Assembly (NCBI RefSeq): GCF_001194135.2
Contig: NC_068988.1
Coordinates: 42,862,470 to 42,924,841, forward strand
Length of the DNA stretch: 62,372 nt
Direction: 5' to 3'
DNA from: Octopus bimaculoides
Taxonomy: Eukaryota
Positions 2,369 through 31,733 of this stretch are shown in pieces (the first letter of the stretch is position 1; each line of letters opens with the position of its first letter). Under the pieces are notes generated by a model. That model had not been told where the DNA came from. It searched no databases and was given only the letters and a program-made list of their open reading frames with translations. A program made the translations under genes and the position numbers.

Positions 2369-2655
2369 NNNNNNNNNNNNNNNNNNNNNNNNNNNNNNNN
2401 NNNNNNNNNNNNNNNNNNNNNNNNNNNNNNNNNNNNNNNNNNNNNNNNNNNNNNNNNNNNNNNNNNNNNNNNNNNNNNNNNNNNNNNNNNNNNNNNNNNN
2501 NNNNNNNNNNNNNNNNNNNNNNNNNNNNNNNNNNNNNNNNNNNNNNNNNNNNNNNNNNNNNNNNNNNNNNNNNNNNNNNNNNNNNNNNNNNNNNNNNNNN
2601 NNNNNNNNNNNNNNNNNNNNNNNNNNNNNNNNNNNNNNNNNNNNNNNNNNNNNNN
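2369..2655. other. Assembly gap flanked by (TA)n
   Basis: Run of N. Confidence 1.
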
Positions 2656-3590
2656 TATATATATATATATATATATATTATATATTGGTTTCGGCTGTTA
2701 TGCCTATCCTGCTATATTGAGATATAATATAATTCAAGATTCGAAAAGGTTTGTGTTAAGCTTACAACTTCGTTTCTTGAACAATAGCGACGTGAATGCC
2801 ATGCATATTCAGGAGTTATTCGTTTCATTTTGTGTTTTTATGACCGCTAATATTCCATTGTAGTAGGTTTTGTTATTTTTCTGATTTTGTTTACGCGGTT
2901 TTACTGTCATTTTAGTTTTTACTTTGTAATATGCATACATACATACATACGTACGTATGTGTGCACATCTAGTTATCTATCTATCTACACAGATGCACAC
3001 ACTCTCTCACACACACAAACACACACACACACAAACACACACACACACGGTGTGTTAAAAACATCGACAAATCGTTTAGTTGTTGGTTCTTATCTCTAAC
3101 GAACTTATATAACAATAGTATTATGGAAAAAGATTTCCATTTCGTGTGACGATATAGACAAATCGCTTTGAGGAACACTGAAAAGAAGATACTTCTAAAA
3201 TATTTCTTTCTCTAAGCTTTTATATTCATCTGTCAATGTATCGAATTTACCGAATATTAATAATAATAAAATTACGAATATAGAATTAAATTAAAAAAAA
3301 CTTAAGAAATAAATCTGCGTATTCTATATTCCATAATATTTCTATTAGGCTGTAATTAATTATGGTACCTTTACAGCTAAACAGATCTTGAATCTGTACG
3401 TGAACTCTACTCAATGTCTAGTGGTATGTTATCTCTTTCAAAGCAAAGAAAAGAAAATACTACACCAGTGGTTTTCAATCATCTTTCCCTATGGTCAACT
3501 TTTGATTTTTATTTCATTCGAGTGGACCTCATAGTCATTCGATATTAGAAGAAATTCTATTGTATTATAATTAAACATTACTAGGGATTA

Positions 3591-4141
3591 CAGGTAAGTT
3601 CACCGCCATCAATTCACTGCCATCAGTTCACCGTCATCAATTCATCGTGAAGAAAGTTCACCTTGAGGAAAGTTTACCGAGTGGTTAGGGCAGCGGACTC
3701 GCGGTCATAGGATCACGGTTTCGATTCCCAGACAGGGCGTTGTGAGTGCTTATTGAGCGAAAACACCTAAAGCTCCACGAGCCTCCAGCAGGGGATGGTG
3801 GCGAACCCTGCTGTACTCTTTCACCACAACTTTCTCTCACTCTTACTTCCTGTTTCTGTTGTGCCTGTAATTCAAAGGGTCAGCCTTGTCACACTGTGTC
3901 ACGCTGAATATCCCCGAGAACTACGTTAAGAGTACACGTGTCTGTGGAGTGCTCAGCCACTTGCACGTTAATTTCACGAGCAGGCTGTTCCGTTGATCGG
4001 ATCAACTGGAACCCTCGACGTCGTAAGCGACGGAGTGCCAACAGCAACACCATTAACAGTTAAAAACTATTTTATTGAACCCCCCCCCCCGAAAAAACAA
4101 ACAAACAAAAATCGCAGAATTAATGACGGTGAACCTACCGG
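3591..4141. mobile_element. Mutator-like MITE nested in the hAT MITE
   Basis: 25-bp TIRs (21/25): CAGGTAAGTTCACCGCCATCAATTC vs revcomp of GAATTAATGACGGTGAACCTACCGG; subterminal 14-bp repeats TTCACCGCCATCAA x3; both flanks contain GATTAC. Confidence 0.6.
3680..4049 (+). mobile_element. SINE-A, 5'-clipped, nested in the Mutator-like MITE
   Basis: Near-identical to 28714-29101 and 49123-49509 but lacks the first ~17 nt. Confidence 0.9.
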
Positions 4142-8661: not shown

Positions 8662-8850
8662 ATTTCTAACATGGATACTAGGCCTGAAATTTAGCGGGAG
8701 TGCTCAGTCGATTAAATCGACTCCAATACTTGACGGGCATTTTATTTTATCGATCACTGAAGAATGAAAAGCAAAGTTGACATTGGCATAATTTGAACTC
8801 ATTACATAAAGAACTAAAACTAAATATTGCTCCAAACATTTTACCAATGC
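8662..8850 (-). mobile_element. SINE-C decayed copy
   Basis: Homologous to 45970-46186. Confidence 0.7.
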
Positions 8851-9507
8851 ACATCCCTTAATTTATTTCTGAAGCTCAAAACAACACATCATAGGGAAAT
8901 GATTGCAATCAATTAAATGGATCGCAATATATCACTGGAACTATTTTAACAAACCTAGCAGGATTTTACTCATTGCAATGAATAAGCGAGGCGTATTGAT
9001 ATGAAGCACTTCACAGATCCTACTACTCCACAGCCTTACTGAATAAAAATATATAAGAACTAAAAGTAATACATTAAAATGAAACAGTCAAAAGAAACAA
9101 TTTGAAGTGTCTGGGGTAAGTGTCCAAGACTGTGTATTCATAAAAAAAAAAACTTTAAGGATAACAAAGCCAGTCTGTTTTTTTCCTCTCAATAACAAAT
9201 AAAAAAAAAGTGGTACTTCATTTTATTGATTTCTGAAGGATGAAGAATAAAATCGACTGCAGTGGTATTTGAACTCATACAGTACATAACTAAATACTGC
9301 AAAACATTCCCACACACTTCGACTCTACAAATAAACCGCACTTGATAGTTTGGTAAAATCAAAAAGCTCATACTTTGAACTATAAATCCTATTTTGCTCA
9401 GAAACATATTAGAAATGCATTTAAATCAGAGGTTGCGAAGTAACCACTCCAATAGCTGATGATTCAATAAGTAGTGGTTAGAAAAACAAACAAGCAAAAA
9501 CAAGAAG

Positions 9508-9513
9508 TTTATT
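9508..9513 (-). terminator. Candidate polyadenylation signal of the ZNF gene
   Basis: AATAAA on the minus strand ~310 nt after the stop, followed by a U/GU-rich tract. Confidence 0.45.
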
Positions 9514-9819: not shown

Positions 9820-12800
9820 TTAATGTTTTCTCTCATGTTTAACAAGGCTTTCATGAGTTCGAAACGTTACCGAACACTTCTGACATTTGAAGCTTTTGAT
9901 GCCCGAGTGTATATTTTCATGCGTCATCAAACTATAACGTTGAGAAAAACCTCGCCCACATGTATCACAAATATGTGACTTTACCGACGAATGTGTACGA
10001 GAGTGTCGCAACAGATGAGAATTGGATACAAACGCTTTGTCACACACATCACATTTAAATGGTCGTTCGCCTGTGTGACTACGGGTGTGATATAATAACT
10101 GAGAAGGTTTCGTAAACTGTTTAGAACAGTATTCACATATAAGTGGGGGTCGCTTTTTCTGTCTACGTGAGGTTCTTTCCGTATTACTGTGATTAACTTT
10201 ACTAGTTGATTTATTATCATTACTACTTGCATCTGATACGACATCTACGTGCATTATACCTTCATGAAAGTCAAGATTTTTAGAAGTTGAAGTCCGTGTA
10301 GAAGAGTCCGACTTCTTAATTCGAGAATCTTTGTGTGTGAACTCTTCGTTAATGTTAAAAAGTTTCTTTGAAATTCTTCCAGATTTTGTGGTCTTCACAG
10401 CAGAAATTGTTTTAGAATCTCTGTATTTATAATTTGATTCATTTACACGAATTTTCAGTTTACGGCTTTTTCTTGAACTTGCTTCCTCCTCGTCATTGTC
10501 TAGTGAGAAGCAAACTTTTTTATTTATACGCCGATCTTTCGGAGAGACATAATTATCTTTCAGTTTTCCTTTGCAGGCGAAGTTTGGTTTCATTTTCGTG
10601 TCAGAGTTGGTAATGCTACCTGTACATTCGGAAGACTGTAACGAGTAAGAATTGCTTAAATTATTCTCCAGTCTACAGCAGTTCACTACTAAAGTTTTCC
10701 GATCATTACCAGCGTTTAATCTAGCAGTTTTCAAACGATTTGGTAGTACTGGAAGTTTGGAAGATTTAGAGTCCCATACCTTTAATAAATTAACATCAGA
10801 TTTCGAATATTGACCATTTCTGCAGTTACTGCTAGAACTTTCTAAACTGTCCATGGATTCAATTTGATTTGTTAAAGAAGTCTCATTGCCAGCTGTTGCA
10901 GCCGTCTGATACAACATATCAAATATGTTTTTCGTTTCATGAATTGTTTTAAAGCCTTCTTCTTCCTTTAAAAGTGTTGCAGTCTTAATAAGAAGAGGCT
11001 CTTTTTCAAAATTAATTGATTGAATTTTCAAAACTTCTCCTTTTCTCAAATTCGTTTTTTTGCTTTCTGGTGTCAATTTAGATGACAAACGACTATATTT
11101 TGCTCCGTTATCATTGGTCGATTGGCTTTGGCAAACAATGTTTGTTTTATCATATTTTATCTTATCATCAACTGTATTTTCAATAACTGATGCCACATTT
11201 TCAATAACTGATGCCACATTTTCCATCTCGGAAATATTCAGTACTCCTGTTGAGTTAGTTACTTTTGTGACGCTAACGTCTTTATTATTTTCTCTCTGAA
11301 GTGTCCGGTTGTAATTCCTTTTGGCATGTGGCCCAGATTTGGAAGATTTCTGGACAAATTTTAGATTCATTGAGTTTTTTCTTTCATTGGATTTATTCGA
11401 CGATTCCCCGAAATTACTGATGCAATTCTTCGAATGTTCACTGCTTTCTGCAGTAACCTTCAGGTCTGGAACTGAGAGGTCGATGTTTCTTGACCCTTCA
11501 ATATTTGTTCGCTTATTTCTCTCGTACTTTGCTCTTGGTGTGTTTTCATCAGCATCCGTAGAAATTTCTTTTGAATCTGATCTCAAAACTTCTTCCACCA
11601 TCCATTCATCATCATCACTTGTTAGGTTGTTTCCTACTTTTGGAATATAATCTTTAAATGACATATTTCTTTTCTGAGCATTTTGTTTTTGGAAATAGCT
11701 TCCGAAGGAGTTATCTGATACCAATGAGCGAGTGCTTAAAGAATTAAAATATTTTATAGAGATTATAGAATTATCTATCTGAGAGTGTTTTCGTTTTAGC
11801 TTTCTGTTTTCTTTCTTTACTTTCCAGCTTTTAACGGAATTAATATTAAATGTATCGAACATTTCAGTATCACTATCGACATACGTGAGATTTATATCTT
11901 CATCCGCGCAAGATTCTATTGGATTGACATTTTTCAATGCCTTAAGTTCATTCTTAGTATCTCTGATAATTGTAGGTTTCGTATTGTTTTCACATATGTT
12001 TGTATTATCTTTCATGCGATGGCTGTCTTTTACTGGCTTATCATCTATTTTCGTTGCATTTCTTTGCAACTTTGATTGCTTAACTTTCTGTGAATGCATA
12101 ACGAGTTTTCTCTGACGAATTTCTTTCGGAATAACGGCTGTTTTGGGTTTTATAATCTTCGATTGGTTGCGTATTTTAAAAGAAACATGTTCTTTAGCAG
12201 AGGGATCCGTCTGGATGTCAGTTTTACTACTCTTCCCGTCTACAGAAGACAAATCATAACACACTTTCCTTCTATTTCTGTTTGTCAATGACTGTCGGCT
12301 AGAAACTCTGGTATTTAACTTCCTAGGTGAAAGTTTCGAATTACTACATCCAATCTCATCTGTTCCGTCTGTTAATGCATGTTCTAGTGAGTCAGGGATT
12401 ATTCCCTTTAATTCATGTTGTTTGCAAATTTCAGTAGTAGAGGTCACAACATTTGAAAAGTTTTCCGTAACAGAATTTTCTTTTAAATCACTTTTCTCTT
12501 CTTCCACAGGACCTTTTGAGTCGTTCTCTGAAAAGTATGTTTGAAATTTTACAGAATTGAATAAAATATCGTCATCACTTTCTGTCCCCAAACCTAAGAT
12601 ATAATCCCCTGTGCTTTCTTCTACGAAACCACCATCACTAGAAGAGGATAATTCCACCACATACTCGTCTTTCTCAGAGTATTTCTCTTCCTCTTTCTTA
12701 CTACATTGTTTGTTTAAAACACCAGGACTTTCGCTGGTGGTATTTTTCCTTGGTCTACCAACTCTATTTTTCTTCAGTTTACCTGCTGATAAAGTATACT

Positions 12801-15800
12801 TCCTGTCACAGACCTTCGTATCAAATACATGATCAGCATAGGCTTTTTCTTCCAAATCAGATTTTCTCCGATTCGAAGCAATGTCTCGGCGATCTGTCTG
12901 TCCTTCGATCTCGTCGGAATTCAAACTCGCTAGAAATTTTGATGTTTTCTCTTTTTGACTACCCAGGGATTTCTTGATAGACCTTTTCCTTCTTTTTCTT
13001 CCTGCACCACGGGATTTGGTCAGTTTATTTCTAAATTTTTCTTCCATCATTACCATCTTACCCACATTTTCAAAATATGCTGCTAGCTTTGCTTTCTTTG
13101 CTTCTAGTTCCGCTTGGTTTGTGTTTTTGTTCACTATTTGTTTCATATCAGTACCACCGCAAATATTACGACTGATCACAAGTTTTATGTTCCTGTATTC
13201 ATCAGCACGACTAGTGAGAATGATTTTGACCAATTCAGTATAATCGTCAGTGAATTCATTCCTGTCTAGGGGCTTATCGTTAACGGACGAATCTCCTTGT
13301 GTGCTTAGCGCATCTATATCCGACAAAACCTTATTTTTACTTCTTTCACGAGTCATACCTTTTGTTTCTCCCCCATTTTCTGAAATTTCTGCTGTTACTA
13401 ATGACTGCTCAGCTCCTTTATTTTCAGACGATGTGTTATCGCCAATTGTTACTTTCATTTCAGATGTCTTCAGTAAAATTTCTTTAATACTACGATATCT
13501 TCCTGCCCCACAATGCTGCAAACCTTGAACAATGTTTGCGTAACTGATGAGAAAACTGTCAAAATCTGATTCAGCTTTTGATAATTGATGTTTAATGGCT
13601 TCATAACAAAGTCTCGCGTTTTCGACTATTGTTGGGTTGACATTTCGAGGTGTAACTTTTTTCTCTCGAAGCGGTGGTGGAGGAGGGAGTTTGAACAAAG
13701 GTGGAGGTGGAGGAGGATAAATAGGTAAAGGGATGCATGGGTGGATCATAGCAATCGGAGACGAACTTTTATTTTTGCAATTATGACTTAAATTTCGACT
13801 CCTATTTTGTTTCTCAGACAATGGTGGTTTTTGTCTAACAGAAGACCGGGAGCTTAGCTGGCGCTTCTTCGCCAAATCACTTAAGGTTTTAGATATTTTC
13901 TGTTGTTTTGTCTGTTCTGAAGCACTTATTCCATGCAATTCGATAGAGGACAATTCATTTCTGTTAGAAGTACTCATTATTTCGTTAGAGTTAAGATTGT
14001 TACTCGTTGGAGACATTTTGTCTTCAGCTGGCAGAGCCAGTTTCAAAGGTTCTTGCATTTCAGCTGTGCTACAAGAACTATTAAGGCCGTGCATGCTGTC
14101 TTCGTTTGTATCGATTGGTTCTTTCGAATTAGTAGAATTTCTCTCGGAATACCACCCCTTCGTTGATCCATAGTAATTTAACACAGACTTTCTCTTGGAA
14201 AACTTTCGCCGAGATTCCTCATTTTTCGTTTTAGACTGGAGATATGGACATTTCCATGGTGCTTTATTTGTCTTTTGTCGCTTGTCTAACTTCTTTTTCA
14301 ATTCAAGATAAGATTTCATCTGCCGTTCCTCCTGGCTTAGATTTGAACCTTCATCAAACCATCCGTCTTCTTCCAATTCCATTTTGCTTACTTTCTCCCC
14401 ATTTTCTTTTAAATGTTTTTCATTCGTCAATTGCAACGGTGTCTCCGAAAGATCTATATTTAAATTTGGTGTCAGTAGTGCCGCTTCACTTTCATTATTT
14501 TTCTCTTTTGCTTGTTCGTTAAATACTGAACTACCCGGATTTTCGATGTTTTCAGAATGTCCACTATCGTGTGTAACAATTATGGTGTCAGAATGTACTT
14601 GCGAAGCTTTATTATTGGCTGCCTCATTTCTGTGCTGCTGGGAATCCTTTGAAAGATTCAAATCAGTTTCTGAACTGCGATTTTTATTTGTCGGGTTACA
14701 AATTTGCTGAACTGTTTGCTCCTTTCCATTCATTTTTGCGCTATTTTTAATTCTAGTTCTTGGTGCAAATTTTGTTTGCAATGCTCTTTTCATTGCCCGT
14801 TCTCTTTTAACTTCCTCGCTTAATCGCGGTCTTCCGCGTGGTCTTCGAGGAACTTCTTTTACATTTTTGGTCTTATATTGTACTTTTTCAACGTTTGATG
14901 TTACAGATTTAGAAGGTATACCAGTATTCGAGGATTGTATTTCCGTAGAACGCTCATTAACATAATCGGTGTATCTGTTGCTAAATCCGCCATTATCAAC
15001 TGATAAAGACATCGACGACGTGTCATCAATCTTGGTTTCTGAGCCATTGTCATTTTTAAAACTGTTTTCTTTGGAGATTCGAGATTTCTTTACACATCTG
15101 CCTCTGTTGATTTCACATTCACTGATCGACTCAGCAAGTTGATAAGCTGTTTTCGAGGCGCATCGATCCGAGAACCTTTTTGTAACTTCTGGGTCATATG
15201 AAACATTTTTCTTTTCCTCCAAAACCACGGCTGACGAGCCCCTTACAGACCCAGTAGATCGGTTCCTTCTTTTTGAAGCATGCGGGTCGATATCGATTCG
15301 TGGAACCATATCTGCAGCGTATATAGTTTGTCCTGGAGTGCACTGGTAAGTTGCTGTTTTGCTTGGATATCGTTGTCTAATAATTCCACCTTGAGTTGTT
15401 GCACACTGACTAGTGTAAACTGGTTTTCTTGTAAACGAACCCAAGCTGTTATTGGGATACGTAGAATATTTCATTTGGTTATCATAGTGAAAATTTGATT
15501 TCTGATCATCGTTTGTAGATGACGACGTAACAGATATAGACGTATCGGAGGCTGCTTGAATATTGGACAAATTAATATGCTGGTTATTGTCGGAATTTTG
15601 AAGAACCATAATGTTATCGGGATTACGTGTGTCACTTTCAAAGCTGGAAACAATATTTTCTATAAAATCATTCTCAGTTTGAACTGAATTCGTCATAGTT
15701 ACAGAAGCAGCATCTTCGAACCCTTCGTCAAAAGCAGAGTTGTAATCATTGAAGGAGTCAAAATCATTGGTCAGTAAATTAGCCAGGAAGACTGGGTCGT

Positions 15801-18800
15801 AATCCGAGAACAAAAAGGATTCATCACTCATCATGTCAGAAGACTGACCGTTCTTAGATCCATCATATTTTCCATTAAATGCTGAAAGTGATTTACCTTC
15901 GTCATTTGGACTCTCTTTTAGATAGCCGTTATCTAAAAAGCAAAAATTGGATTCAGTTAGTTCTTGTAAAACATTTTCTGCTCTACACTGCTTCGAGTCT
16001 TGTATCGGCTGAGCATTTGAAGGCTCATTTACATTTACGGCTTGAAAATTATTATCAGCTAGTCCATTAAGGCCAGATGAATATTCTGACCCAAAGTAAT
16101 TAATTCGAGATCCTGAAGAATCGACTGGAGTTCGGATACTCGTATGAAAACACTGAGTAATCTCATTTTGCATTGTCTCTGTAGACGTTTCTGTAGCATT
16201 ACGCTCACTTGATACTGATGGCTGGGTATACCTTACAGGATGTTGCAGCTTAAATATTGAAGAGCTAACACCAGAGGCAAGATTTTGGTAGTGCCCCATG
16301 TTTTGGCTGAGCAGAGGCTGACTGATGTTGTACATTTGATTTTGCAAATACTGACCATTTTCAGAAATGTAGTCATTCTTTTTTATTTCAGACATCGATA
16401 AATTAGAACACTTTTGTGGTTGGACTTGGTAAGGTATTTTTGCTGTGTTTCCCATTTCTTTATTGATAACTTTAGTTGGATCACAAGGGACATTTCTGGG
16501 AGGTTTTGGAATCCATGCCATTATGTCTCTAAAATTGTCCGGATGAATAACTTCCGAGTTATAATGGCGCTGATGGAATTGTGGGAGCGAGTTGCCTGCG
16601 TTAATGCCGGTATTGAAAGGGTTTCTAAACGTGTTGTTTGCCGTAGAGTGAAATTGTATGTAATTGTTTGGTTTCAGATACCCGCTATTGTTTCTGTTGA
16701 TTTCACTGTCTTTTAAAGGATTTACAGAGCATCCAGTCGTTTTATTATATATGTCGATTCCAGCATGGCTTTTAACCTCATTTTGTATATTGGAATCAAA
16801 CCTTTCATTAATACTACTGTGTTGTGATAAGGGTTCCATTCTTGGTTGTAAGTTGTCCTGAGTCAAATATTGTTTTGGTGATGTCACATTGTCTGTTCTT
16901 ACATTTGAAATAGGATGTGACATGTTTTGTGCACTGCTATCAGCAGTCGGACACTGAATAGATCGAGCATTAGTCGGTGGCTTAGATTGAAAAAAGTCTG
17001 GATTATGAAGATTACTAGGATATTTCACAGTGGAATTATCAATTTGAGAATAAACCTCTTGGGAAGACATAAATTGATTAAAGTTCTTAATGCAATTATT
17101 AGAATTGTGAGCCAATCTATTTGTCTTATAAACCAAATAATCTGACTGGTTGCCTTTATTATACATATTTGGATATAATTGTTGCTGCCTTTGTTGAGGT
17201 GATGGTAAAACTGCATTCTGTAAGACTGTGTACTGATCCTGATTACTCATTTCTGGTACATTTACATAAGAGTTTTGTAGAGACTGGCAATTTTCTATAA
17301 ATCCGCGAATACCGTTTATGTTAGTTTTTTCCTCACTAACAGATGTTACCGATGGAGTGTTCTGCAAACAAACCATATAGGGAGAACTAAAAGGTTTGAA
17401 GTTGGTCCTTTGATGGTTACTGAAAATGTTAGATGACGTGGCCAAGCCATCGTTGCTTTTGCCGATGTAATTGCTTACAGAGTTATACTGGAATCGGGGA
17501 GAATAACAAAGCGTAGAAGACTGTGAGTTTACTGAATTAGGGTAAAAAATGTACTGTATATCAGAAGATTTGTTCATGGACATATTTGCAAAATATAATG
17601 GCTGACATTCTTGATAACATTGTTCTGGAATTTGACGACGATCATCATTGCTGGAACATGGTCTAGGATTCATGAACGAACTCTTGAACAGACTGCTATT
17701 ATAAGCCGAAGGGTAATTTGACATATTTCTTGTTCTGTAAATATCAGCTTCCTCACCGGCTGGGTTTGATAAATTTAATGGAGAATTCATTACTGTGTTC
17801 ATTGTGGAAAACTTATTCAAATGCTTTGCAGGATTTTCCTCTTTATCTCTAAAGTTTGGTCCTGTTTTAACAAATTTGTCATTAGCTTGTTCTGGATGTT
17901 TTATCATCACTTCATCCGAACCAAGTAAAGCATTCTGATCTGGTGCCTTATTTCCGTCAGTACTGTTCACAGATGAAGAAAGAGTACAGCAGTCTTCTTT
18001 CAAACTCTTATCTTGTATCTGGCTTGATTTTATTGTTGCCTCCTGAGTTTCTTCCACGATACTGAATGTTGAAGGTTTAGAGTCAGAACTGGAGTTCCTT
18101 ACAGAATCGCTCTCAACGTTTAATGTTTTACCTAAATATTGAGTGTTGGTATTCTTATAATTTAAAACAGTCTGTGGATTATCATTCGGATTTAAGTTGG
18201 AACTGATGTGCTTATTTTCTGGTGTGACTGAATATTTTGACTGAATAAGAGGCTGAGGTGAGTCGTATTGTTTGCTTTTATCACTCCCATTGACTGATGA
18301 ATCATTTATTCCAGTTGAATGTGAAGGTGTGTCAGAGGTAGCCTGTGGACATACTTTTCCAATTCCTGGAAAAAGATGGCCAGACACTCCGGAAAGAATT
18401 TCATTTGAATTTTCAGAGTGACATGTTTGTTCAGTAGGTATTTTATCACTGTCAACTTCTGTGACAACTTTTTCCTGTGATTGTTTCTTTAACGTTTTAC
18501 TAACACCAAAATCTTGTACAAAAATACTAGCAATCGATTCTTCGTCATTTTGATTCGTGAGAACCGATTTTGATTTAGAGATCATTTGACTTTCATCGTC
18601 AGGTGATTTTAGAGGATCTAGTGTTTTGCCTTCAACATTCGAAACATCTATACTTTCTTCAGCCACATCTTCTCCACCACCAACACCACCATCATCCCCA
18701 CTTTTACCACTGCCAGTAGCAGCAGCAGAAGCAGCAGTAGAAGAAGCAGCAGCAGCAAATTGGAGATTCTCAGATATTTCATCAGCACTGTCTTGCGGTA

Positions 18801-19281
18801 GATCACCATTCGCAGAAAAGGTTCTAGAACTAAACTTATCTTTCTCCTTTGGGCATGCAGAAGTATTTGCATTTTGTACATCATATGATTCTAAGCCTAA
18901 TTTAGTATTAGCAGTAATCTGCCGAGAATCAGTGTTCATTACTGAAAAGTGTTTCAATTCACAAATATTGCTGTCATTAGCCAAAGCGCAATTAATTTTC
19001 TCATCACACATCCTCGTATCGGACGTAGATGACGATGATGAAGTACTCATATTTTCGCAGCTTTTCACAATTGCTGGCGGAGAATCTAGACACGGATTTT
19101 TCCATGCAGGGTTAGACTTGCACTGCTTTAATTTGTTATCCATGGAATACTCCCCATGGCTTGATGAATTACCAAGATCTATTGATAATGATGGAGGATC
19201 TGATTGGGACTTACTCCCTTGGTAATCCTCGAGCCATTTTAAGATATTCAATAGACGCTTCTTGGAATCTTCATTGCTCAT
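9820..19281 (-). CDS. Giant single-exon C2H2 zinc-finger / AT-hook nuclear protein (3153 aa from the first in-frame ATG; frame open up to 19407)
   Basis: 9.46-kb stop-free frame in AT-rich DNA; four C2H2 fingers, GRP AT-hooks and basic NLS-like clusters (GRKRRKR, RRQKKRP); ATG context gaaataATGa. Confidence 0.95.
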   Translation of the reverse strand: MSNEDSKKRLLNILKWLEDYQGSKSQSDPPSLSIDLGNSSSHGEYSMDNKLKQCKSNPAWKNPCLDSPPAIVKSCENMSTSSSSSTSDTRMCDEKINCALANDSNICELKHFSVMNTDSRQITANTKLGLESYDVQNANTSACPKEKDKFSSRTFSANGDLPQDSADEISENLQFAAAASSTAASAAATGSGKSGDDGGVGGGEDVAEESIDVSNVEGKTLDPLKSPDDESQMISKSKSVLTNQNDEESIASIFVQDFGVSKTLKKQSQEKVVTEVDSDKIPTEQTCHSENSNEILSGVSGHLFPGIGKVCPQATSDTPSHSTGINDSSVNGSDKSKQYDSPQPLIQSKYSVTPENKHISSNLNPNDNPQTVLNYKNTNTQYLGKTLNVESDSVRNSSSDSKPSTFSIVEETQEATIKSSQIQDKSLKEDCCTLSSSVNSTDGNKAPDQNALLGSDEVMIKHPEQANDKFVKTGPNFRDKEENPAKHLNKFSTMNTVMNSPLNLSNPAGEEADIYRTRNMSNYPSAYNSSLFKSSFMNPRPCSSNDDRRQIPEQCYQECQPLYFANMSMNKSSDIQYIFYPNSVNSQSSTLCYSPRFQYNSVSNYIGKSNDGLATSSNIFSNHQRTNFKPFSSPYMVCLQNTPSVTSVSEEKTNINGIRGFIENCQSLQNSYVNVPEMSNQDQYTVLQNAVLPSPQQRQQQLYPNMYNKGNQSDYLVYKTNRLAHNSNNCIKNFNQFMSSQEVYSQIDNSTVKYPSNLHNPDFFQSKPPTNARSIQCPTADSSAQNMSHPISNVRTDNVTSPKQYLTQDNLQPRMEPLSQHSSINERFDSNIQNEVKSHAGIDIYNKTTGCSVNPLKDSEINRNNSGYLKPNNYIQFHSTANNTFRNPFNTGINAGNSLPQFHQRHYNSEVIHPDNFRDIMAWIPKPPRNVPCDPTKVINKEMGNTAKIPYQVQPQKCSNLSMSEIKKNDYISENGQYLQNQMYNISQPLLSQNMGHYQNLASGVSSSIFKLQHPVRYTQPSVSSERNATETSTETMQNEITQCFHTSIRTPVDSSGSRINYFGSEYSSGLNGLADNNFQAVNVNEPSNAQPIQDSKQCRAENVLQELTESNFCFLDNGYLKESPNDEGKSLSAFNGKYDGSKNGQSSDMMSDESFLFSDYDPVFLANLLTNDFDSFNDYNSAFDEGFEDAASVTMTNSVQTENDFIENIVSSFESDTRNPDNIMVLQNSDNNQHINLSNIQAASDTSISVTSSSTNDDQKSNFHYDNQMKYSTYPNNSLGSFTRKPVYTSQCATTQGGIIRQRYPSKTATYQCTPGQTIYAADMVPRIDIDPHASKRRNRSTGSVRGSSAVVLEEKKNVSYDPEVTKRFSDRCASKTAYQLAESISECEINRGRCVKKSRISKENSFKNDNGSETKIDDTSSMSLSVDNGGFSNRYTDYVNERSTEIQSSNTGIPSKSVTSNVEKVQYKTKNVKEVPRRPRGRPRLSEEVKRERAMKRALQTKFAPRTRIKNSAKMNGKEQTVQQICNPTNKNRSSETDLNLSKDSQQHRNEAANNKASQVHSDTIIVTHDSGHSENIENPGSSVFNEQAKEKNNESEAALLTPNLNIDLSETPLQLTNEKHLKENGEKVSKMELEEDGWFDEGSNLSQEERQMKSYLELKKKLDKRQKTNKAPWKCPYLQSKTKNEESRRKFSKRKSVLNYYGSTKGWYSERNSTNSKEPIDTNEDSMHGLNSSCSTAEMQEPLKLALPAEDKMSPTSNNLNSNEIMSTSNRNELSSIELHGISASEQTKQQKISKTLSDLAKKRQLSSRSSVRQKPPLSEKQNRSRNLSHNCKNKSSSPIAMIHPCIPLPIYPPPPPPLFKLPPPPPLREKKVTPRNVNPTIVENARLCYEAIKHQLSKAESDFDSFLISYANIVQGLQHCGAGRYRSIKEILLKTSEMKVTIGDNTSSENKGAEQSLVTAEISENGGETKGMTRERSKNKVLSDIDALSTQGDSSVNDKPLDRNEFTDDYTELVKIILTSRADEYRNIKLVISRNICGGTDMKQIVNKNTNQAELEAKKAKLAAYFENVGKMVMMEEKFRNKLTKSRGAGRKRRKRSIKKSLGSQKEKTSKFLASLNSDEIEGQTDRRDIASNRRKSDLEEKAYADHVFDTKVCDRKYTLSAGKLKKNRVGRPRKNTTSESPGVLNKQCSKKEEEKYSEKDEYVVELSSSSDGGFVEESTGDYILGLGTESDDDILFNSVKFQTYFSENDSKGPVEEEKSDLKENSVTENFSNVVTSTTEICKQHELKGIIPDSLEHALTDGTDEIGCSNSKLSPRKLNTRVSSRQSLTNRNRRKVCYDLSSVDGKSSKTDIQTDPSAKEHVSFKIRNQSKIIKPKTAVIPKEIRQRKLVMHSQKVKQSKLQRNATKIDDKPVKDSHRMKDNTNICENNTKPTIIRDTKNELKALKNVNPIESCADEDINLTYVDSDTEMFDTFNINSVKSWKVKKENRKLKRKHSQIDNSIISIKYFNSLSTRSLVSDNSFGSYFQKQNAQKRNMSFKDYIPKVGNNLTSDDDEWMVEEVLRSDSKEISTDADENTPRAKYERNKRTNIEGSRNIDLSVPDLKVTAESSEHSKNCISNFGESSNKSNERKNSMNLKFVQKSSKSGPHAKRNYNRTLQRENNKDVSVTKVTNSTGVLNISEMENVASVIENVASVIENTVDDKIKYDKTNIVCQSQSTNDNGAKYSRLSSKLTPESKKTNLRKGEVLKIQSINFEKEPLLIKTATLLKEEEGFKTIHETKNIFDMLYQTAATAGNETSLTNQIESMDSLESSSSNCRNGQYSKSDVNLLKVWDSKSSKLPVLPNRLKTARLNAGNDRKTLVVNCCRLENNLSNSYSLQSSECTGSITNSDTKMKPNFACKGKLKDNYVSPKDRRINKKVCFSLDNDEEEASSRKSRKLKIRVNESNYKYRDSKTISAVKTTKSGRISKKLFNINEEFTHKDSRIKKSDSSTRTSTSKNLDFHEGIMHVDVVSDASSNDNKSTSKVNHSNTERTSRRQKKRPPLICEYCSKQFTKPSQLLYHTRSHTGERPFKCDVCDKAFVSNSHLLRHSRTHSSVKSHICDTCGRGFSQRYSLMTHENIHSGIKSFKCQKCSVTFRTHESLVKHERKH
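9823..10137 (-). other. Four tandem C2H2 zinc fingers at the extreme C-terminus
   Basis: CX2CX12HX3H x4 at 28-aa spacing; linkers TGERP, SSVKS, SGIKS. Confidence 0.97.
11177..11223 (-). repeat. Perfect in-frame 21-bp tandem duplication in the CDS (ENVASVI x2)
   Basis: TTTTCAATAACTGATGCCACA x2 on the plus strand. Confidence 0.95.
12745..12765 (-). other. AT-hook-like motif RVGRPRK
   Basis: GRP core in a basic context. Confidence 0.7.
14824..14847 (-). other. AT-hook motif RRPRGRPR
   Basis: Canonical PRGRPR core. Confidence 0.85.
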
Positions 19282-19414
19282 TATTTCTGCTTGTTGCAAT
19301 GTAGATATATCAAAATGTTCATATGTAGAGCACCAGCCAATCACAATATCGAGTGGATTATTGAATAAATCAGAGTATTTACTGTCATCTCGGTCGAAGA
19401 TATCACTTCATAGA

Positions 19415-19440
19415 CTGTAAATGATAAAGAGAAAAAAACA
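19415..19440 (-). promoter_or_regulatory. 3' splice acceptor opening the giant exon
   Basis: TGTTTTTTTCTCTTTATCATTTACAG| on the minus strand; exon starts at 19414. Confidence 0.75.
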
Positions 19441-19493: not shown

Positions 19494-19729
19494 NNNNNNN
19501 NNNNNNNNNNNNNNNNNNNNNNNNNNNNNNNNNNNNNNNNNNNNNNNNNNNNNNNNNNNNNNNNNNNNNNNNNNNNNNNNNNNNNNNNNNNNNNNNNNNN
19601 NNNNNNNNNNNNNNNNNNNNNNNNNNNNNNNNNNNNNNNNNNNNNNNNNNNNNNNNNNNNNNNNNNNNNNNNNNNNNNNNNNNNNNNNNNNNNNNNNNNN
19701 NNNNNNNNNNNNNNNNNNNNNNNNNNNNN
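19494..19729. other. Assembly gap (in a putative intron)
   Basis: Run of N flanked by (TA)n. Confidence 1.
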
Positions 19730-20440: not shown

Positions 20441-20516
20441 CTATGCTTTCTTCAGCCACATCTTCTCCACCACCAGCACCACCATCATCCCCATCACCAC
20501 TTTTACCACTGCCAGT

Positions 20517-20547
<31 letters not shown>

Positions 20548-20581
20548 GCAGCAGCAGTAGAAGAAGCAGCAGCAGAAAATT
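20441..20581 (-). repeat. Direct duplicate of CDS segment 18648-18761 (Ala/Gly-rich)
   Basis: Shared unique stretches CTTTCTTCAGCCACATCTTCTCCACCACC and CTTTTACCACTGCCAGTAGC; differs by triplet expansions and about 3 substitutions. Confidence 0.95.
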
Positions 20582-20595: not shown

Positions 20596-21413
20596 GATCT
20601 GACGAGTAGCTATATTTTTGAATAGAGTTTATTTTCGATAATTTCAATTGATTTTAATCGATTAAAATTTCTTTTCTATTTGAAAATTAGTTATGAAACA
20701 CGTGTAACCTTTTTATTATATTTATCTTATGATATTTACTTTACTTTATATTATACTCATTTATTGTGCTTTTAATTATTAATTTTTCTATATGTGATAG
20801 TGGATTTTCATCGATGAGTTCTTGAAACTTGGTTATTTCCCCTANNNNNNNNNNNNNNNNNNNNNNNNNNNNNNNNTATATATATATATATATATCCCCT
20901 TCACTTCATTTCCAAACATTGAAATTATTCTAAGGACGAGGAAAATATCTGAAATACACGGAACATACCATTGTAAGGGACATAGATGTTTTGACACCGT
21001 TTTTCAATTGAATATATTTTGTTTACTTAAAAATTGGAATTCTGGAAAATAAGTTTTTTTTCTACAACCGCTATTTCTGTTTTTGTTTACGTGAAATTAT
21101 AAAAAGAAATGTAAGATTTGGCTGTAAGATTTAGCATGTGGAGAGACCTTCTAGGCTTAACTTTGTGCTGGTTTAGAATCACCTAAAAAGATTCTGAATC
21201 AATACATTCGACTAAAAATTCTTCAAGGTGATGCCCCAGCATGGCTGCAGTCCAGTGACTGAAACAAGTAAAAAAAATTTTATAAAATAAAAAATAACGA
21301 AGAATTTATCTTCTTTAGTAATTTCCATAAAAATTTAACATTGGAGTCCATGAAAATATCTATAAAACGGTACATGGTGGGGGCAAGATAGTTTAGAGAC
21401 TATGGATAATATA

Positions 21414-23892: not shown

Positions 23893-24420
23893 TTCTTTTT
23901 CTACTATAGACACAAGGCTTGGAACTTTGGGGAAGTGTGTAAGTCAATTACATCGACTCCGGTGCTCAACTGGTACTTTCTTTTATCGACCTCGAAATGA
24001 TGAAAAGCAAAGTCGACCTAGGCGGAATTTGAACTCAGAACGCAAAGACTGACGAAATGTCACTAAGCATATTGTTAATTCCGGCGAGGTTGACTGTTCC
24101 TTTCGGGAGTCGATAAAATAAGTACTAGTTGAGCACTGGGGTCGATCTAATAGACTTAATCCACAACACCGAAATTGCTAGCCTTGAGTCAAAATTTAAA
24201 ACTGATATTACTTTTGTTGTCAAGGTGGTCAGCAAAATGCTTAGCGGCATTTCGACTGTCTTTACTTCTGAGTTCAAATTCCGCCAAAGTCAGCTTTGCC
24301 TTTTATTCTTTCAGGGTCGATAAAATAAGTACCAGCTGAGCACTGAGATCGATTTAATCGACTTACTCCTTCACCTAAATTTGCTGTCAAATTTCTGTTA
24401 AAATTTGAAACCGGTATTAA
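23893..24420. mobile_element. Cluster of three SINE-C copies (one minus, two plus, head-to-head)
   Basis: ~23893-24072 (-), ~24076-24200 (+), ~24222-24420 (+). Confidence 0.75.
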
Positions 24421-28713: not shown

Positions 28714-29101
28714 GGAGGCGCAATGGCCCAGTGATTAGGGCAGCGGATTCGCGGTCATAGGATCGCGGTTTTGATTCCCAGACCGAGCGTTGTGAGTGTT
28801 TTTTGAGCGAAATCATCAAAAGCTCCACGAAGCTCCAGCAGGGAATGGTGGCGAACCCTGCTGTACTCTTCCACCACAACTTTCTCTCACTCTTACTTCC
28901 TGTTTCTGTTGTGCCTGTAATTCAAAGGGTCAGCCTTGTCACACTGTGTCACGCTGATTATCCCCGAGAACTACGTTAAGGGTACACGTGTCTGTGGAGT
29001 GCTCAGCCACTTGCACGTTAATTTCACGAGCAGGCTGTTCCGTTGATCGGATCAACTGGAACCCTCGACGTCGTAAGCGACGGAGTGCCAACAACAACAA
29101 A
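28714..29101 (+). mobile_element. Full-length young SINE-A
   Basis: tRNA-like A/B boxes, (AAC)n tail, exact 11-bp TSD ATACGCTTAGT. Confidence 0.95.
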
Positions 29102-30265
29102 ATACGCTTAGTAATTATTGAGTTACATATTTTTATGAATCTAGGTTCAAATCATAACGAAGTCGACTTTGAAATTTATGTCTCTGTGTTGATAATTAAA
29201 TACCGAGATCAATATAATCAACCATTCTCCTGTATAAAATGTGTAGCACTATGCTTCTGTTAGAAATTCTTGTGTGGTTGTTGCTGTCATTTAGCTGTTG
29301 TAAGACCTAATCGAGCAGACTCGCAATCAAAGCCATCCCTGCCGTGACCTACCAAGTCTATTACTTGTGCGCAGTGGACCCAGAACATTATCCAATGTGA
29401 TCTTTTTTAATGCAGCTGATATGAGGATTAACTAGACTATAATTTCTAGAAAAGACTATCATTGGCACGATCAATGAAAATAAGGCAATTCTACAAGAGT
29501 ATTTTCATGTTGCGGATTATCCATAATTCTTCGCAGTTTGGTGGGGCACTATTGTAATGTACCCTATACATACTGATGATAGGTGTTCAGATTCGTTCTT
29601 TATCTATTAGCAATTTAGCTATTTCAGTTGTGTACTTGGAATTATAATTGTTTAGTGTAGCACTAAATATTGTTTCGTGCATATTGATGGATGCTGTTCG
29701 CTATTAACCATTATCCTTTATTAACGTCGCTATATCAGCTGGGACTGTTTATGTTGGCAGTTTTTCTTCATTACGTATCTCAGATATCTATCTTGTTATA
29801 TGTCAACACTTGATGAATGTGTGTTTGTATATGTGTACGAATTCGTGTGTGTGTGTGTGTGTGTGTGTATATAGATATGCGCGTCTTTGCTGGTATGAAT
29901 ATACGTGCGTATATGTGGGTGAATGTGTATTTTGTGAATTTCGGAGGCGTTAAAATCAATAGTAACAATTACCTTCGACTTTAGAAAACCACCGTCGATT
30001 ATTTTCGTTTACACTACCGCTGCTACTTCCAATACTACAGCATCGGAGTTTCGGCACGGTCACGTTAATCGACCCAAGTTTATTTCTGTTGCGGATTTTA
30101 ATCACTATTGAAGTGATAAACTGAATCCTGTGAGATTTGAAATTATGACTTGCCAGAGAGATTAGGGCAATTACCCCTTGACCTTTTATTTTTTAAGGGC
30201 TACGGGGATGGTGAGAAAAAGAAAAGAGATTATCTTCAAATAAAAAAAAAATAAATAAAATAATT

Positions 30266-30583: not shown

Positions 30584-31520
30584 GAGTGAATTAAGTCTAC
30601 CTCCTAAGAATCGAAAACGCGATGTACCAGATCAAATACCGCAAATTAATTCGTCAGACCTACTGACAGTTCCGAACTATCGTCCCAGACTTGCTATTGT
30701 ATTATATCGACTTCAAAACGATGAATGGTAAAACAGACCTCATCAGGATTTGAAATTAGAACGCAGAGATATGGAACAAATACTGCAAGGCATAAAAATT
30801 ATATAACGATGAAGAATTAAAATATGTCTATAAAAATAGCAGCTCAAATAAAGCCCTGCAGTCTAACTATCAAATACCCGACGCTAAATATCTGAAGTAT
30901 AATATAGTGGGGTAAAATTCATTTCCAACTAGACAGAAGTGGCATTAACTGATGTGTGTTCCGTTAGATTGCAGAACTGGTTAAAGATATCTCTGTATTC
31001 AAGATAAAAATGGGCTCTAATATGAAGGGCTTCCGGATTTTTTTTTTTGTGGTTTAGTCAAACAGGACGACAACGTCTATGACCTTTTTCAGGGCGGGAA
31101 AAATGCTTGAAATAAATTGTTAAACCAAGCAAAATGTTAAGACTACTACTACCTAAGATCAAGAACAATCCACGAGACACACTTTCGGGCCGTTTGCATC
31201 TGCTAAATTTTACCCACGGGCTTTAGTCAATCCGATGTTATAAAGCAGAGCAGTCGGGTCGAACCCGAAATCACGAAGTTGCAAAACCAACTTCTTAATT
31301 ACACACCCATGACTTAGACTGTTGGGTTAGTACACTTGATTAGATGCCTTGTAGTTTTTAGTCTCTATGGTCTCAGCTAAAAATTTACTGGGTCAACTCT
31401 CGTTTCATTTCCACGAAGCTGATTAAACTATTGTGGTTTAGTTCCAAGCCAGATCTGATGTAGCAAATCTATTGTCAAAAGCGTTCCAACCATGAATATC
31501 TCACATTTCTCCAGAATATT

Positions 31521-31733
31521 CTTTTCTACTTTTGGTACAAGGCCCGAAATGTTTTGGGAGGAGGCCAGTCGATTAGATCTACCCCAGTACGCAACTGGTA
31601 CTTAAATTATCGACTCCGAGAGGATGAAAGGCAAAGTCGACCTTGGCGGAATTTGAACTCAGAACGTAGAGAGACGAAATACCGCTTAGCATTTCACCCG
31701 ACGTGCTAACGTTTCTGCCAGCTCGCCATCACC
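31521..31733 (-). mobile_element. Full-length SINE-C
   Basis: Exact 15-bp TSD TTTCTCCAGAATATT (31506-31520 / 31734-31748). Confidence 0.95.

What the first reader, a model, noticed from the sequence alone, without database searches (positions are those of the whole stretch)
9820..19281. ~9.5-kb single coding exon: 3,050-aa mostly disordered protein with AT-hooks and only four terminal zinc fingers
Seen: a stop-free, transposon-free 9.46-kb frame in a repeat-saturated scaffold, which implies purifying selection. The exon including 3'UTR would be ~9.9 kb. Established: coleoid genomes have a greatly expanded C2H2-ZNF family, typically with long finger arrays. This gene has the opposite design: four fingers (contact residues -1/2/3/6 = KSQY, SSHR, QYST, TESK; only the first linker is canonical), two AT-hooks and a huge S/N/Q/K-rich region. 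Inference: a chromatin scaffold or condensate-forming factor, possibly lineage-specific. I recognise no orthologue.
Basis: partly seen in the sequence, partly recalled or inferred. Interest (0 to 1): 0.7.

Follow-up and report, generated by a model that had tools for sequence, protein, structure and literature searches.

The report
Giant one-exon cephalopod zinc-finger gene
This is a real, intact gene whose single 9.5-kb coding exon makes a 3,153-residue, mostly unstructured nuclear DNA-binding protein; it belongs to an unnamed family detected only in coleoid cephalopods, so it is a modest find, not a new kind of system.

Summary
It ends in four C2H2 fingers and carries two AT-hooks. A strong splice acceptor and an in-frame TGA lie just upstream of the ATG.

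The gene is under selection. Against a related species (P0001, 84% nt identity), dN/dS is 0.46 (CI 0.40-0.52) and all 30 indels are in frame.

An exhaustive HMMER scan of 1.84 billion proteins with aa 1151-2300 found only three other representatives. These are P0001, a cuttlefish protein (90% cluster with Acanthosepion pharaonis CAE1293568.1, "unnamed protein product"), and a third species' ORF. All are 3.1-3.4k aa, in one ORF, with the same four terminal fingers.

Overall identity across the deep split is 26%. About ten short islands are conserved: an acidic/aromatic motif, the first AT-hook, a poly-proline tract, a two-part helical module, a basic cluster and the fingers.

No Pfam, PDB or fold match exists outside the fingers.

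Best reading: a DNA-anchored transcription or chromatin regulator that recruits partners through conserved short motifs. Condensate formation is untested. Expression and exon structure could not be checked.

The parts
9820..19281 (-). Complete coding sequence: ATG at 19281, TAA at 9820-9822, 3,153 aa, no internal stop
   Evidence: Collinear at 84% nt / 74-77% aa identity with the intact 3,136-aa ORF of L001.
19415..19440 (-). Polypyrimidine tract plus AG (TGTTTTTTTCTCTTTATCATTTACAG): the likely 3' splice site that opens the giant exon at 19414
   Evidence: Read directly. Conserved in the related species L001. Splicing itself is inferred.
19282..19414 (-). 5'UTR part of the giant exon. An in-frame TGA at 19408-19410 rules out an upstream coding exon joining through this acceptor.
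19132..19281 (-). N-terminal 50 aa (MSNEDSKKRLLNILKWLEDYQG...). 82% identical to P0001 but not conserved in the cuttlefish-type orthologues.
15682..15834 (-). Acidic/aromatic island, aa 1150-1200 (FLFSDYDPVFLANLLTNDFDSFNDYNSAFDEGFEDAAS). It has 11 D/E, 9 F/Y and no K/R in 44 residues. Proposed activation or partner-binding motif.
   Evidence: 66-68% identical to the cuttlefish-type proteins over 47 aa. Conserved in all four species. The function is inferred.
15115..15189 (-). Conserved island, aa 1365-1389 (KRFSD.C.SKTA.QLA)
14824..14847 (-). AT-hook 1, RRPRGRPR (aa 1479-1486). The RPRGRP core is invariant in all four species at the same alignment position.
14272..14349 (-). Conserved helix-like island, aa 1645-1670 (LS.EE..MK.Y.ELK.KL)
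13678..13734 (-). Poly-proline tract, aa 1850-1868 (PPPPPPLFKLPPP)
13471..13674 (-). Central module, part A, aa 1870-1937 (REKK..PR.V.PTIVENA..C.EAI...SDFDSFLISYANIVQGL..CG..RY..IK.IL). Predicted as three helices.
   Evidence: 63% of columns invariant in four species. About 50% identity to P0023 over aa 1869-2056. AF2 gives helices at pLDDT 61-67. No Pfam, PDB or Foldseek match.
13132..13245 (-). Central module, part B, aa 2013-2050 (VKIIL.SRADEYRNIK...SRNICGG). Predicted helical.
12982..12999 (-). Basic cluster RKRRKR (aa 2095-2100), a likely nuclear localisation signal
   Evidence: Aligned basic cluster KKRRKRK / KKQNKRK in the other lineage. The NLS role is inferred.
12745..12765 (-). AT-hook 2, RVGRPRK (aa 2173-2179). 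Shared with P0001. The cuttlefish-type proteins carry their second hook (KKRGRPRK) about 200 residues further on.
12565..12654 (-). Conserved island, aa 2210-2239 (SSD.GFVEESTGDY..GLG.ES)
12109..12186 (-). Conserved basic island, aa 2366-2391 (SFK.RN..KII.PK)
10912..10941 (-). Short conserved island, aa 2781-2790 (KNIFD)
9823..10143 (-). Four tandem C2H2 zinc fingers, aa 3047-3153 (ZF1 10075-10137, ZF2 9991-10053, ZF3 9907-9969, ZF4 9823-9885)
   Evidence: Pfam PF00096, E = 8.7e-15, 4 stretches. 66% identical to the P0023 fingers. dN/dS 0.19 for aa 3069-3153. AF2 pLDDT 70-90.
9508..9513 (-). First canonical AATAAA, 307 nt after the stop and followed by a T-rich run. Likely polyadenylation signal; the exon would then be about 9.9 kb.
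   Evidence: Inferred.

Best explanation
The region is the single coding exon of an intact gene. The gene belongs to an unnamed family of giant nuclear proteins (3.1-3.4 thousand residues) that could be detected only in coleoid cephalopods.

Proposed mechanism:
- The protein is anchored to DNA by its C-terminal four-finger C2H2 array. Fingers 1-2, joined by the only canonical TGERP linker, are the most likely base-reading core.
- Two AT-hooks add minor-groove contacts at AT-rich DNA.
- A conserved basic cluster probably takes the protein into the nucleus.
- The roughly 3,000 residues in front of the fingers are mostly unstructured. They act as a long tether carrying about ten conserved short docking sites.
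- The most notable sites are an acidic/aromatic motif of the kind found in transcriptional activation domains and a two-part helical module. Through these the protein would recruit partners to its binding sites.

Shown: gene integrity, selection, architecture, the conserved islands and the restricted distribution.

Inferred: DNA binding, nuclear location, partner recruitment, and whether the effect is activation or repression.
For: Gene integrity:
- ORF and start context are read directly.
- Chance of such an ORF is about 1e-101.
- Pfam finds four C2H2 fingers and nothing else.

Selection:
- The orthologue P0001, on a genomic contig, is collinear through the acceptor, UTR and whole ORF.
- dN/dS is 0.46 (bootstrap 0.40-0.52), 0.18 in the islands and 0.50 (0.44-0.58) in the rest. 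All 30 indels are in frame.
- In the second lineage pair, dN is 0.34, dS 1.10 and dN/dS 0.31, with 71 in-frame indels.

Distribution:
- An exhaustive HMMER scan of 1.84e9 representatives found four proteins only: P0001, P0023, and P0024 plus P0025.
- P0023 clusters at 90% with A. pharaonis CAE1293568.1.
- P0024 and P0025 are one ORF split by a 1-nt shift.

Shared architecture:
- Same four terminal fingers, two AT-hooks and the conserved islands across 26% overall identity.
- Finger contact positions are partly invariant: ZF1 K/S/Y, ZF2 S/H/R, ZF3 Q/Y.

Structure prediction:
- With only four sequences in the alignment, AF2 still folds the fingers at pLDDT 70-90. It leaves the preceding 300 aa at pLDDT 26-46.
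- The central module is predicted helical at low-to-moderate confidence.

Precedent:
- AT-hooks paired with major-groove C2H2 fingers are an established arrangement, as in PATZ1 and ZFAT (PMC11354804).
Against: - There is no expression, splicing or localisation data, so the transcript structure is inferred.
- Two of the three finger linkers are non-canonical. The array may therefore not bind DNA as a continuous four-finger unit.
- ZF1 also passes the Pfam cut-off for the JAZ dsRNA-binding finger type (26.7 bits against a cut-off of 22.6).
- The helical module has no fold or sequence match and only pLDDT ~60.
- Selection on most of the length is weak. Some 150-codon windows reach dN/dS of 0.8-0.96.
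- 'Coleoid-only' rests on one profile built from two close sequences and on what is in the library. Two follow-up word-index searches were uninformative.
Confidence: 0.7

Rival explanations
1. It is a fast-evolving orthologue of an already known bilaterian large zinc-finger regulator, such as a HIVEP/Schnurri-, PATZ1- or ZNF292-like protein. Its non-finger sequence would have diverged beyond detection.
For: - The protein diverges quickly: only 26% identity within coleoids.
- Finger-only similarity to 'Zinc finger protein 40' (HIVEP1) of a sea cucumber and to a sal-like protein.
- A weak PF25420 ZN292-like finger hit, E = 0.19.
- Giant exons and long disordered regions are typical of such proteins (own knowledge).
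Against: - All similarity to P0002-P0004 is confined to the fingers.
- The architecture differs: four tandem terminal fingers, no BTB domain and no separated finger pairs.
- The exhaustive scan with the central 1,150 aa found nothing outside four cephalopod representatives.
- PDB profile searches found nothing.
Confidence: 0.13
2. It is an offshoot of the expanded coleoid C2H2 repertoire that targets repeats or transposons. The long region would act as a silencing effector in place of a KRAB-like domain.
For: - Cephalopods have very large C2H2 repertoires, which have been linked to transposon load (PMC10547256).
- The genome context is repeat-rich.
- AT-hooks would suit AT-rich repeats.
Against: - Repeat-targeting families have long, rapidly changing finger arrays. 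PMC10547256 required at least 5 fingers.
- Here there are four fingers kept at 66% identity across the deepest split, with dN/dS of 0.19.
- That pattern indicates a stable target, not an arms race.
- Only one representative per lineage was found, not a multi-copy family.
Confidence: 0.08
3. The fingers bind RNA or mediate protein contacts. On this view the protein is an RNA-associated or structural scaffold, not a DNA-bound regulator.
For: - ZF1 passes the zf-C2H2_jaz cut-off.
- Two non-canonical linkers.
- AT-hooks can also serve protein contacts (PMC11354804).
Against: - The JAZ hit overlaps a stronger classical C2H2 hit.
- The best PDB relatives of the finger block are all DNA-bound arrays: ZNF568, PRDM9, CTCF and ZBTB24.
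- The RPRGRP AT-hook core is invariant.
Confidence: 0.07
4. The ORF is a non-functional accident, a decaying pseudogene, or repeat-derived sequence.
For: - Weak constraint over much of its length, with windows at dN/dS of 0.8-0.96.
- Low-complexity pieces and a recent internal duplication.
Against: - The chance of the ORF is about 1e-101.
- Four species keep it open over 9.4-10.2 kb with about 100 in-frame indels.
- dN/dS is significantly below 1 even outside the islands.
- No transposon-type domain was found.
Confidence: 0.02

Closest known systems
Unnamed coleoid orthologues: P0001 (Logan SRR11869391), P0023 (Logan ERR12370320 and others; 90% cluster with Acanthosepion pharaonis CAE1293568.1 'unnamed protein product'), and P0024+P0025 (ENA ERZ21867824)
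   Same: - One uninterrupted ORF of 3.1-3.4k aa.
- The same order of conserved islands.
- Two AT-hooks and four terminal C2H2 fingers.
   Different: - Only 26% overall identity to the cuttlefish-type proteins.
- The N-terminus is not conserved.
- The second AT-hook sits at another position.
- The octopod-like pair has an extra predicted helix after module B.
- The only named public record lacks the fingers.
- None of these proteins is characterised.
PATZ1 (ZBTB19) and ZBTB24: BTB + AT-hook + C-terminal C2H2 factors
   Same: - AT-hook(s) in the middle with a short C2H2 array at the C-terminus. PATZ1 has 4-7 fingers (PMC11354804).
- The ZBTB24 fingers are among the PDB matches.
- Likely the same logic: minor-groove plus major-groove reading with partner recruitment.
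   Different: - No BTB/POZ domain.
- About five times longer.
- No similarity outside the fingers.
- Not a member.
HIVEP/Schnurri (ZNF40) large zinc-finger proteins
   Same: - More than 2,000 aa and mostly non-globular with few fingers.
- A sea-cucumber 'Zinc finger protein 40' is among the finger-level hits.
- A very large coding exon (own knowledge).
   Different: - HIVEP proteins carry two widely separated finger pairs (own knowledge). Here four tandem fingers sit at the extreme C-terminus.
- Similarity is confined to the fingers.
AHDC1 / PRR12 / SETBP1-type AT-hook proteins
   Same: Long, mostly disordered nuclear proteins with AT-hooks, encoded largely by one giant exon (own knowledge).
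   Different: - Those proteins have no C2H2 array and carry their own conserved domains (own knowledge).
- No such Pfam domain is hit here.
Expanded coleoid / KRAB-type poly-zinc-finger families
   Same: - The C2H2 finger fold.
- The first linker is of the TGEKP type.
   Different: - Those families have long, fast-changing arrays and many paralogues (PMC10547256).
- Here there are four slowly evolving fingers, one representative found per lineage, and a 3,000-aa non-finger region.

Membership tests
C2H2 zinc-finger proteins (Pfam PF00096) | C-X2-C-X12-H-X3-H units that score above the Pfam gathering threshold | tested here: met
   54.7 bits against a cut-off of 25.2, with 4 stretches. The pattern is found four times. 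AF2 gives beta-beta-alpha units at pLDDT 70-90.
AT-hook-containing proteins | A G-R-P core flanked by R/K (and P) residues | tested here: met
   RRPRGRPR and RVGRPRK. The first hook is invariant in four species. This is a motif-level test only; no binding was tested and no Pfam AT_hook hit was reported.
Unnamed coleoid giant ZF/AT-hook family (P0001, P0023/CAE1293568.1, P0024+P0025) | A single ORF of about 3.1-3.4k aa with the same ordered islands (acidic/aromatic motif, RPRGRP, poly-Pro, SDFDSFLISYANIVQGL module, SRADEYRNIK module, GFVEESTGDY) and four terminal fingers | tested here: met
PATZ1 / ZBTB (BTB-ZF) family | N-terminal BTB/POZ domain | tested here: not met
   A Pfam scan of the whole protein at E <= 1 lists only finger models.
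HIVEP/Schnurri | Two widely separated pairs of C2H2 fingers (ZAS domains), with homology outside the fingers | tested here: not met
   There are only four tandem fingers, at aa 3049-3153. BLASTP to P0003 ('Zinc finger protein 40') aligns only the fingers.
KRAB/SCAN/ZAD/FiNZ-type poly-ZF repressors | An N-terminal effector domain plus a long tandem array (five or more fingers) | tested here: not met
   No such domain, and only four fingers.
AHDC1/PRR12-type AT-hook proteins | The family-specific conserved C-terminal domains (Pfam DUF models) | tested here: not met
   No non-finger Pfam family at E <= 1.
Intrinsically disordered / condensate-forming scaffold | Experimentally or predictor-verified disorder, and phase separation | tested here: inconclusive
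   Supporting disorder:
- The composition is polar-rich.
- AF2 pLDDT is 26-46 for aa 2740-3040, with folded fingers as an internal control.
- The linker in aa 1945-2005 is at pLDDT ~31-39.

Limits: only about 680 of 3,153 residues were modelled, no dedicated disorder predictor was available, and phase separation cannot be tested here.

The most novel reading that the evidence does not exclude
The gene arose in the coleoid stem lineage and has been kept as an intronless ~10-kb ORF ever since. It would be a cephalopod-specific chromatin organiser: the fingers and AT-hooks tether it to AT-rich or repeat-rich DNA, and its new helical module and acidic motif assemble lineage-specific regulatory complexes. 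It might also be a major substrate of cephalopod A-to-I recoding. On this reading it is tied to the reorganised coleoid genome or to neural novelty.
Probability: 0.12. Interest if true: 0.6.

Novelty: new variant of a known kind. Interest (0 to 1): 0.35.

Why it matters
- It defines a previously unnamed orthologous family. The only public named record is a truncated 'unnamed protein product' that lacks the fingers.
- It gives the family a correct full-length architecture and a set of conserved motifs to test.
- A 9.5-10 kb intronless ORF kept open across the deepest split among the four orthologues, despite about 74% sequence turnover, is a clean natural example. It shows selection acting on reading-frame continuity and short linear motifs, not on overall sequence.
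- If the family really is coleoid-restricted, it is a candidate lineage-specific regulator in a clade known for genome reorganisation and large zinc-finger repertoires.
- Functionally it is most likely an ordinary type of DNA-bound regulator, so the interest is moderate.

Tried and rejected
- **P0002 as an orthologue (rejected).** This 3,072-aa protein looked like one by length and E-value. BLASTP shows it is a poly-finger protein that matches only through repeated fingers.
- **Finger-block search in the 5.8-billion-protein index.** Only 20 candidates were scored, all generic ZNFs at 47% identity or less. It did not even return P0001, so it says nothing about finger orthologues.
- **Concatenated four-species island profile in the same index.** 6,289 candidates and no hit, again not recovering known orthologues. 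This is a limit of the word index, not evidence of absence.
- **PDB sequence searches.** The finger block gave only generic DNA-binding arrays. The island and central-module profiles gave nothing significant, with best E values of 0.09 and 0.56.
- **Structure of the central module.** AF2 gave pLDDT 50, and Foldseek against PDB gave zero matches.
- **Exact look-up of the window's own protein.** Neither start variant is on record, so the source species could not be named.
- **Source lineage.** That the window is octopod-like is only inferred. The cuttlefish protein and the third species are 53% identical to each other but 26% identical to the window protein.
- **Literature.** A search for run accession SRR11869391 returned 0 papers. 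A search for a described cephalopod AT-hook/C2H2 single-exon gene found nothing relevant.
- **Pfam scan of six other window ORFs.** No families were found, so there is no neighbouring gene to help identify the locus.
- **Logan contigs L004-L006 as transcripts.** They end in T-rich low complexity without a poly(A) signal, so they cannot be used as expression evidence.
Full report
**1. Observation**

The minus strand of the window is stop-free over 9820..19344. The first ATG is at 19281 and the TAA stop is at 9820-9822. That gives 3,153 residues, about 354 kDa, with a pI of 8.7.

From the local base composition a random codon is a stop with p = 0.0715. The chance of 3,153 stop-free codons is therefore about 1e-101.

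Immediately upstream lies a textbook 3' splice site, TGTTTTTTTCTCTTTATCATTTACAG, with the AG ending at 19415. An in-frame TGA follows at 19408-19410. No upstream coding exon can therefore join through this acceptor, and ATG 19281 (A at -3) is the start. Any upstream exons would be non-coding and lie beyond the N gap at 19494-19729.

The first canonical AATAAA is at 9508-9513, 307 nt after the stop, and is followed by a T-rich run. Splicing and polyadenylation are inferred, not shown.

**2. Content of the protein**

Pfam finds only C2H2 finger models, in four stretches at aa 3047-3153. The protein ends on the last histidine of finger 4.

So is the remark that only linker 1 (TGERPF) is canonical; linkers 2 and 3 read SSVKSH and SGIKSF.

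Other features found:
- Two AT-hooks: RRPRGRPR at aa 1479-1486 and RVGRPRK at aa 2173-2179.
- A basic cluster, RKRRKR, at aa 2095-2100.
- Two poly-proline runs around aa 1856-1870.

Composition is S 13.6%, N 9.5%, K 9.0% and W 0.3%.

The window around the gene carries several interspersed repeat families and six N gaps bordered by TA/CA microsatellites. None of those repeat families enters the ORF.

**3. Is it a gene under selection?**

The full-length search returned one true relative, P0001. It is 3,136 aa long and aligns at 74% identity (BLASTP) over 100% of the query. It is encoded on a 9.7-kb Logan contig, L001.

L001 is genomic. It aligns at 84% nt identity from the intron and acceptor, through the 5'UTR, to the end of the ORF.

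Nei-Gojobori estimates over 3,085 aligned codons:

| Region | dN/dS |
|---|---|
| Whole ORF (dN 0.117, dS 0.256) | 0.46 (bootstrap 95% CI 0.40-0.52) |
| Finger block (aa 3069-3153) | 0.19 |
| Conserved islands | 0.18 |
| Remaining 2,655 codons | 0.50 (CI 0.44-0.58) |

Some 150-codon windows approach neutrality, at 0.8-0.96, yet remain stop-free in both species. All 30 internal indels are whole codons.

In the second lineage pair (P0023 against the merged P0024/P0025 protein, called M3 here), dN is 0.34, dS is 1.10 and dN/dS is 0.31, with 71 in-frame indels.

The ORF is therefore maintained by selection. Most of that selection acts on frame continuity and on short islands, not on the bulk sequence.

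**4. Relatives elsewhere**

A profile of aa 1151-2300 (window protein plus P0001; alignment A1) was scored against all 1.84 billion representatives. Four proteins reached E <= 0.001:
- P0001.
- P0023, 3,397 aa, E = 2.9e-79.
- P0024, 1,887 aa, E = 3.2e-56.
- P0025, 1,439 aa, E = 2.2e-14.

P0023 shares a 90% cluster with Acanthosepion (Sepia) pharaonis CAE1293568.1, labelled 'unnamed protein product'. That public model is collinear with P0023 aa 24-2972 in a single alignment, but it is truncated and lacks the fingers.

P0024 and P0025 are adjacent, overlapping calls on one 124-kb ENA contig. They are two halves of one ~9.95-kb ORF split by a single 1-nt shift. That shift may be an assembly error.

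All of these proteins end in the same four fingers. The window protein's fingers are 66% identical to those of P0023 over 110 aa.

Overall identity is 26% between the window pair and the cuttlefish-type pair, and 53% within the latter. This suggests the window comes from the other coleoid branch and is octopod-like, but the source species could not be identified.

P0002, which looked promising, is a poly-finger protein that matches only through its fingers. P0003 (HIVEP1-like) and P0004 (sal-like) also match only through fingers.

**5. Conserved islands**

The four-way alignment has 491 invariant columns, concentrated in about ten islands:

| Residues | Conserved pattern or feature |
|---|---|
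| 1150-1200 | FLFSD[YF]DP.F..LLTND...NSAFD..FEDAAS.TM |
| 1365-1389 | KRFSD.C.SKTA.QLA |
| AT-hook 1 | RPRGRP core |
| 1645-1670 | LS.EE..MK.Y.ELK.KL |
| 1850-1868 | poly-proline tract |
| 1870-1937 | REKK..PR.V.PTIVENA..C.EAI...SDFDSFLISYANIVQGL..CG..RY..IK.IL |
| 2013-2050 | VKIIL.SRADEYRNIK...SRNICGG |
| 2210-2239 | SSD.GFVEESTGDY..GLG.ES |
| 2366-2391 | SFK.RN..KII.PK |
| 2781-2790 | KNIFD |
| 3045-3153 | the four fingers |

The first island has 11 D/E, 9 F/Y and no K/R in 44 residues.

The second AT-hook is present in both lineages but at different positions. The basic cluster is aligned in both.

Several finger contact positions are invariant: ZF1 -1 K, 2 S, 6 Y; ZF2 -1 S, 3 H, 6 R; ZF3 -1 Q, 2 Y. 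This points to a conserved binding target for at least fingers 1-2.

**6. Structure**

AF2 was run on aa 2740-3153 with the four-sequence alignment. It folds the four fingers at pLDDT 70-90. The preceding ~300 residues stay at block means of 26-46. This is an internal control showing that the low confidence is not merely an effect of the shallow alignment.

AF2 on aa 1845-2110 predicts helices across islands 1870-1937 and 2013-2050. Their pLDDT is about 55-67, and the linker between them is at 31-39.

Foldseek against PDB found nothing. Profile searches of PDB sequences with the islands or the central module found nothing significant.

'Mostly disordered' is therefore supported for the parts tested and by composition. 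However, the protein does contain a small, novel and probably helical module.

**7. Mechanism**

*Shown:* an intact, selected gene; a four-finger array that folds as classical beta-beta-alpha units; invariant AT-hook cores; a conserved basic cluster; conserved short islands in a polar, low-confidence background.

*Inferred from established knowledge of these modules:*
- C2H2 arrays read the major groove, about 3 bp per finger, best when joined by TGEKP-type linkers.
- AT-hooks insert into the minor groove of AT-rich DNA, often beside a major-groove domain (PMC11354804).

On that basis the protein enters the nucleus and is anchored to DNA by fingers 1-2, possibly also 3-4, together with the hooks. 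It would then use the acidic/aromatic island as an activation-type docking site, and the helical module and other islands to recruit partners.

I put this at about 0.7. Whether it activates, represses or merely organises chromatin is open. Condensate formation is possible for any protein of this composition but has no specific support.

**8. Comparison with known families**

It works like the AT-hook plus C2H2 factors PATZ1, ZBTB24 and ZFAT, and like giant few-finger regulators such as HIVEP/Schnurri. It is not a member of any of them:
- There is no BTB domain.
- There are no separated finger pairs.
- There is no long finger array.
- There are no AHDC1/PRR12-type domains.
- There is no similarity outside the fingers.

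It also differs from the expanded, repeat-linked poly-finger families. Its four fingers evolve slowly, and only one representative per lineage was found (PMC10547256).

It is a member of an unnamed coleoid family defined here by island order and terminal fingers.

**9. Verdict**

Novelty lies at the level of a new, lineage-restricted family with an unusual build: a ~10-kb intronless ORF with 3,000 aa of tether in front of four fingers. It sits within a well-known functional kind.

The main limits:
- No expression data are available.
- 'Coleoid-only' rests on one exhaustive search with a two-sequence profile.
- Two further index searches were uninformative.
- The source species remains unidentified.

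Noticed in passing
window 18648-18757 and 20441-20556: A 116-nt piece of the ORF has a 90.5% identical same-strand copy about 1 kb upstream of the exon, beyond the N gap. The piece covers aa ~176-211, an Ala/Ser/Gly-rich run with local dN/dS of about 0.96 that is length-variable in P0001. The copy would read ...AAATGSGKSGDGDDGGAGGGEDVAEESI. Its origin is unexplained; it could be a recent fragment duplication or an unstable CAG-type tract.
   Followed up: partly
window 11176-11223: A perfect 21-nt tandem duplication (2.3 copies) encodes ENVASVI-ENVASVI-EN in frame. It is absent from P0001, so it is a recent in-frame expansion.
   Followed up: yes
window 3677-4058, 8706-8812, 23942-24386, 28727-29108, 31514-32809, 36784-37817, 45982-47530, 49136-49861, 50019-51762 and others: Several short interspersed repeat families are present, 100-300 nt long, 60-95% identical and on both orientations. 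All lie outside the ORF. Two similar copies sit in the 3' flank at about 9240-9300 and 8706-8830.
   Followed up: partly
window 2369-2655, 19494-19729, 20845-20876, 39748-40407, 48630-48639, 58334-59108: Six assembly gaps (runs of N), most bordered by TA or CA/TG microsatellites, as read around gaps 2369-2655, 19494-19729, 39748-40407 and 48630-48639. The gap at 19494-19729 hides the intron only about 80 nt upstream of the giant exon's acceptor.
   Followed up: no
window 19282-19414: The 5'UTR part of the exon holds two short upstream ATGs: ATGAAGTGA, out of the ORF's frame, and GAGATGACAG. The second lies in a stretch conserved with L001 (GACCGAGATGAC). These may be uORFs.
   Followed up: no
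window 18626-19225 (+): A 199-aa antisense ORF lies opposite the N-terminal low-complexity part of the gene. It is most likely a by-product of the GCN/CAG-rich sequence.
   Followed up: no
window 60461-61213 (-): A 250-aa ORF whose C-terminal half looks like a mobile-element protein tail (…DIVIWNREEKLCTAVEISYPAGVN…). It has no Pfam match.
   Followed up: partly
L003 9960-10060: The orthologous ~9.95-kb ORF on ENA contig ctg112646l is split into two gene calls (P0025 and P0024) by a single 1-nt frameshift near CCACCCGAAGCC. It may be an assembly error or a real lesion.
   Followed up: partly
P0026 (CAE1293568.1, Acanthosepion pharaonis): This is the only public named record of the family. It is truncated: collinear with P0023 aa 24-2972 at 93.6% identity, then it ends in unrelated residues and lacks the four fingers. 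Databases therefore misrepresent the architecture.
   Followed up: yes
L001 9603-9647: P0001 continues 13 residues past the last finger histidine (HQQQICNPKTKTT), and the cuttlefish-type proteins continue about 20 residues. The window protein stops exactly at the finger.
   Followed up: no
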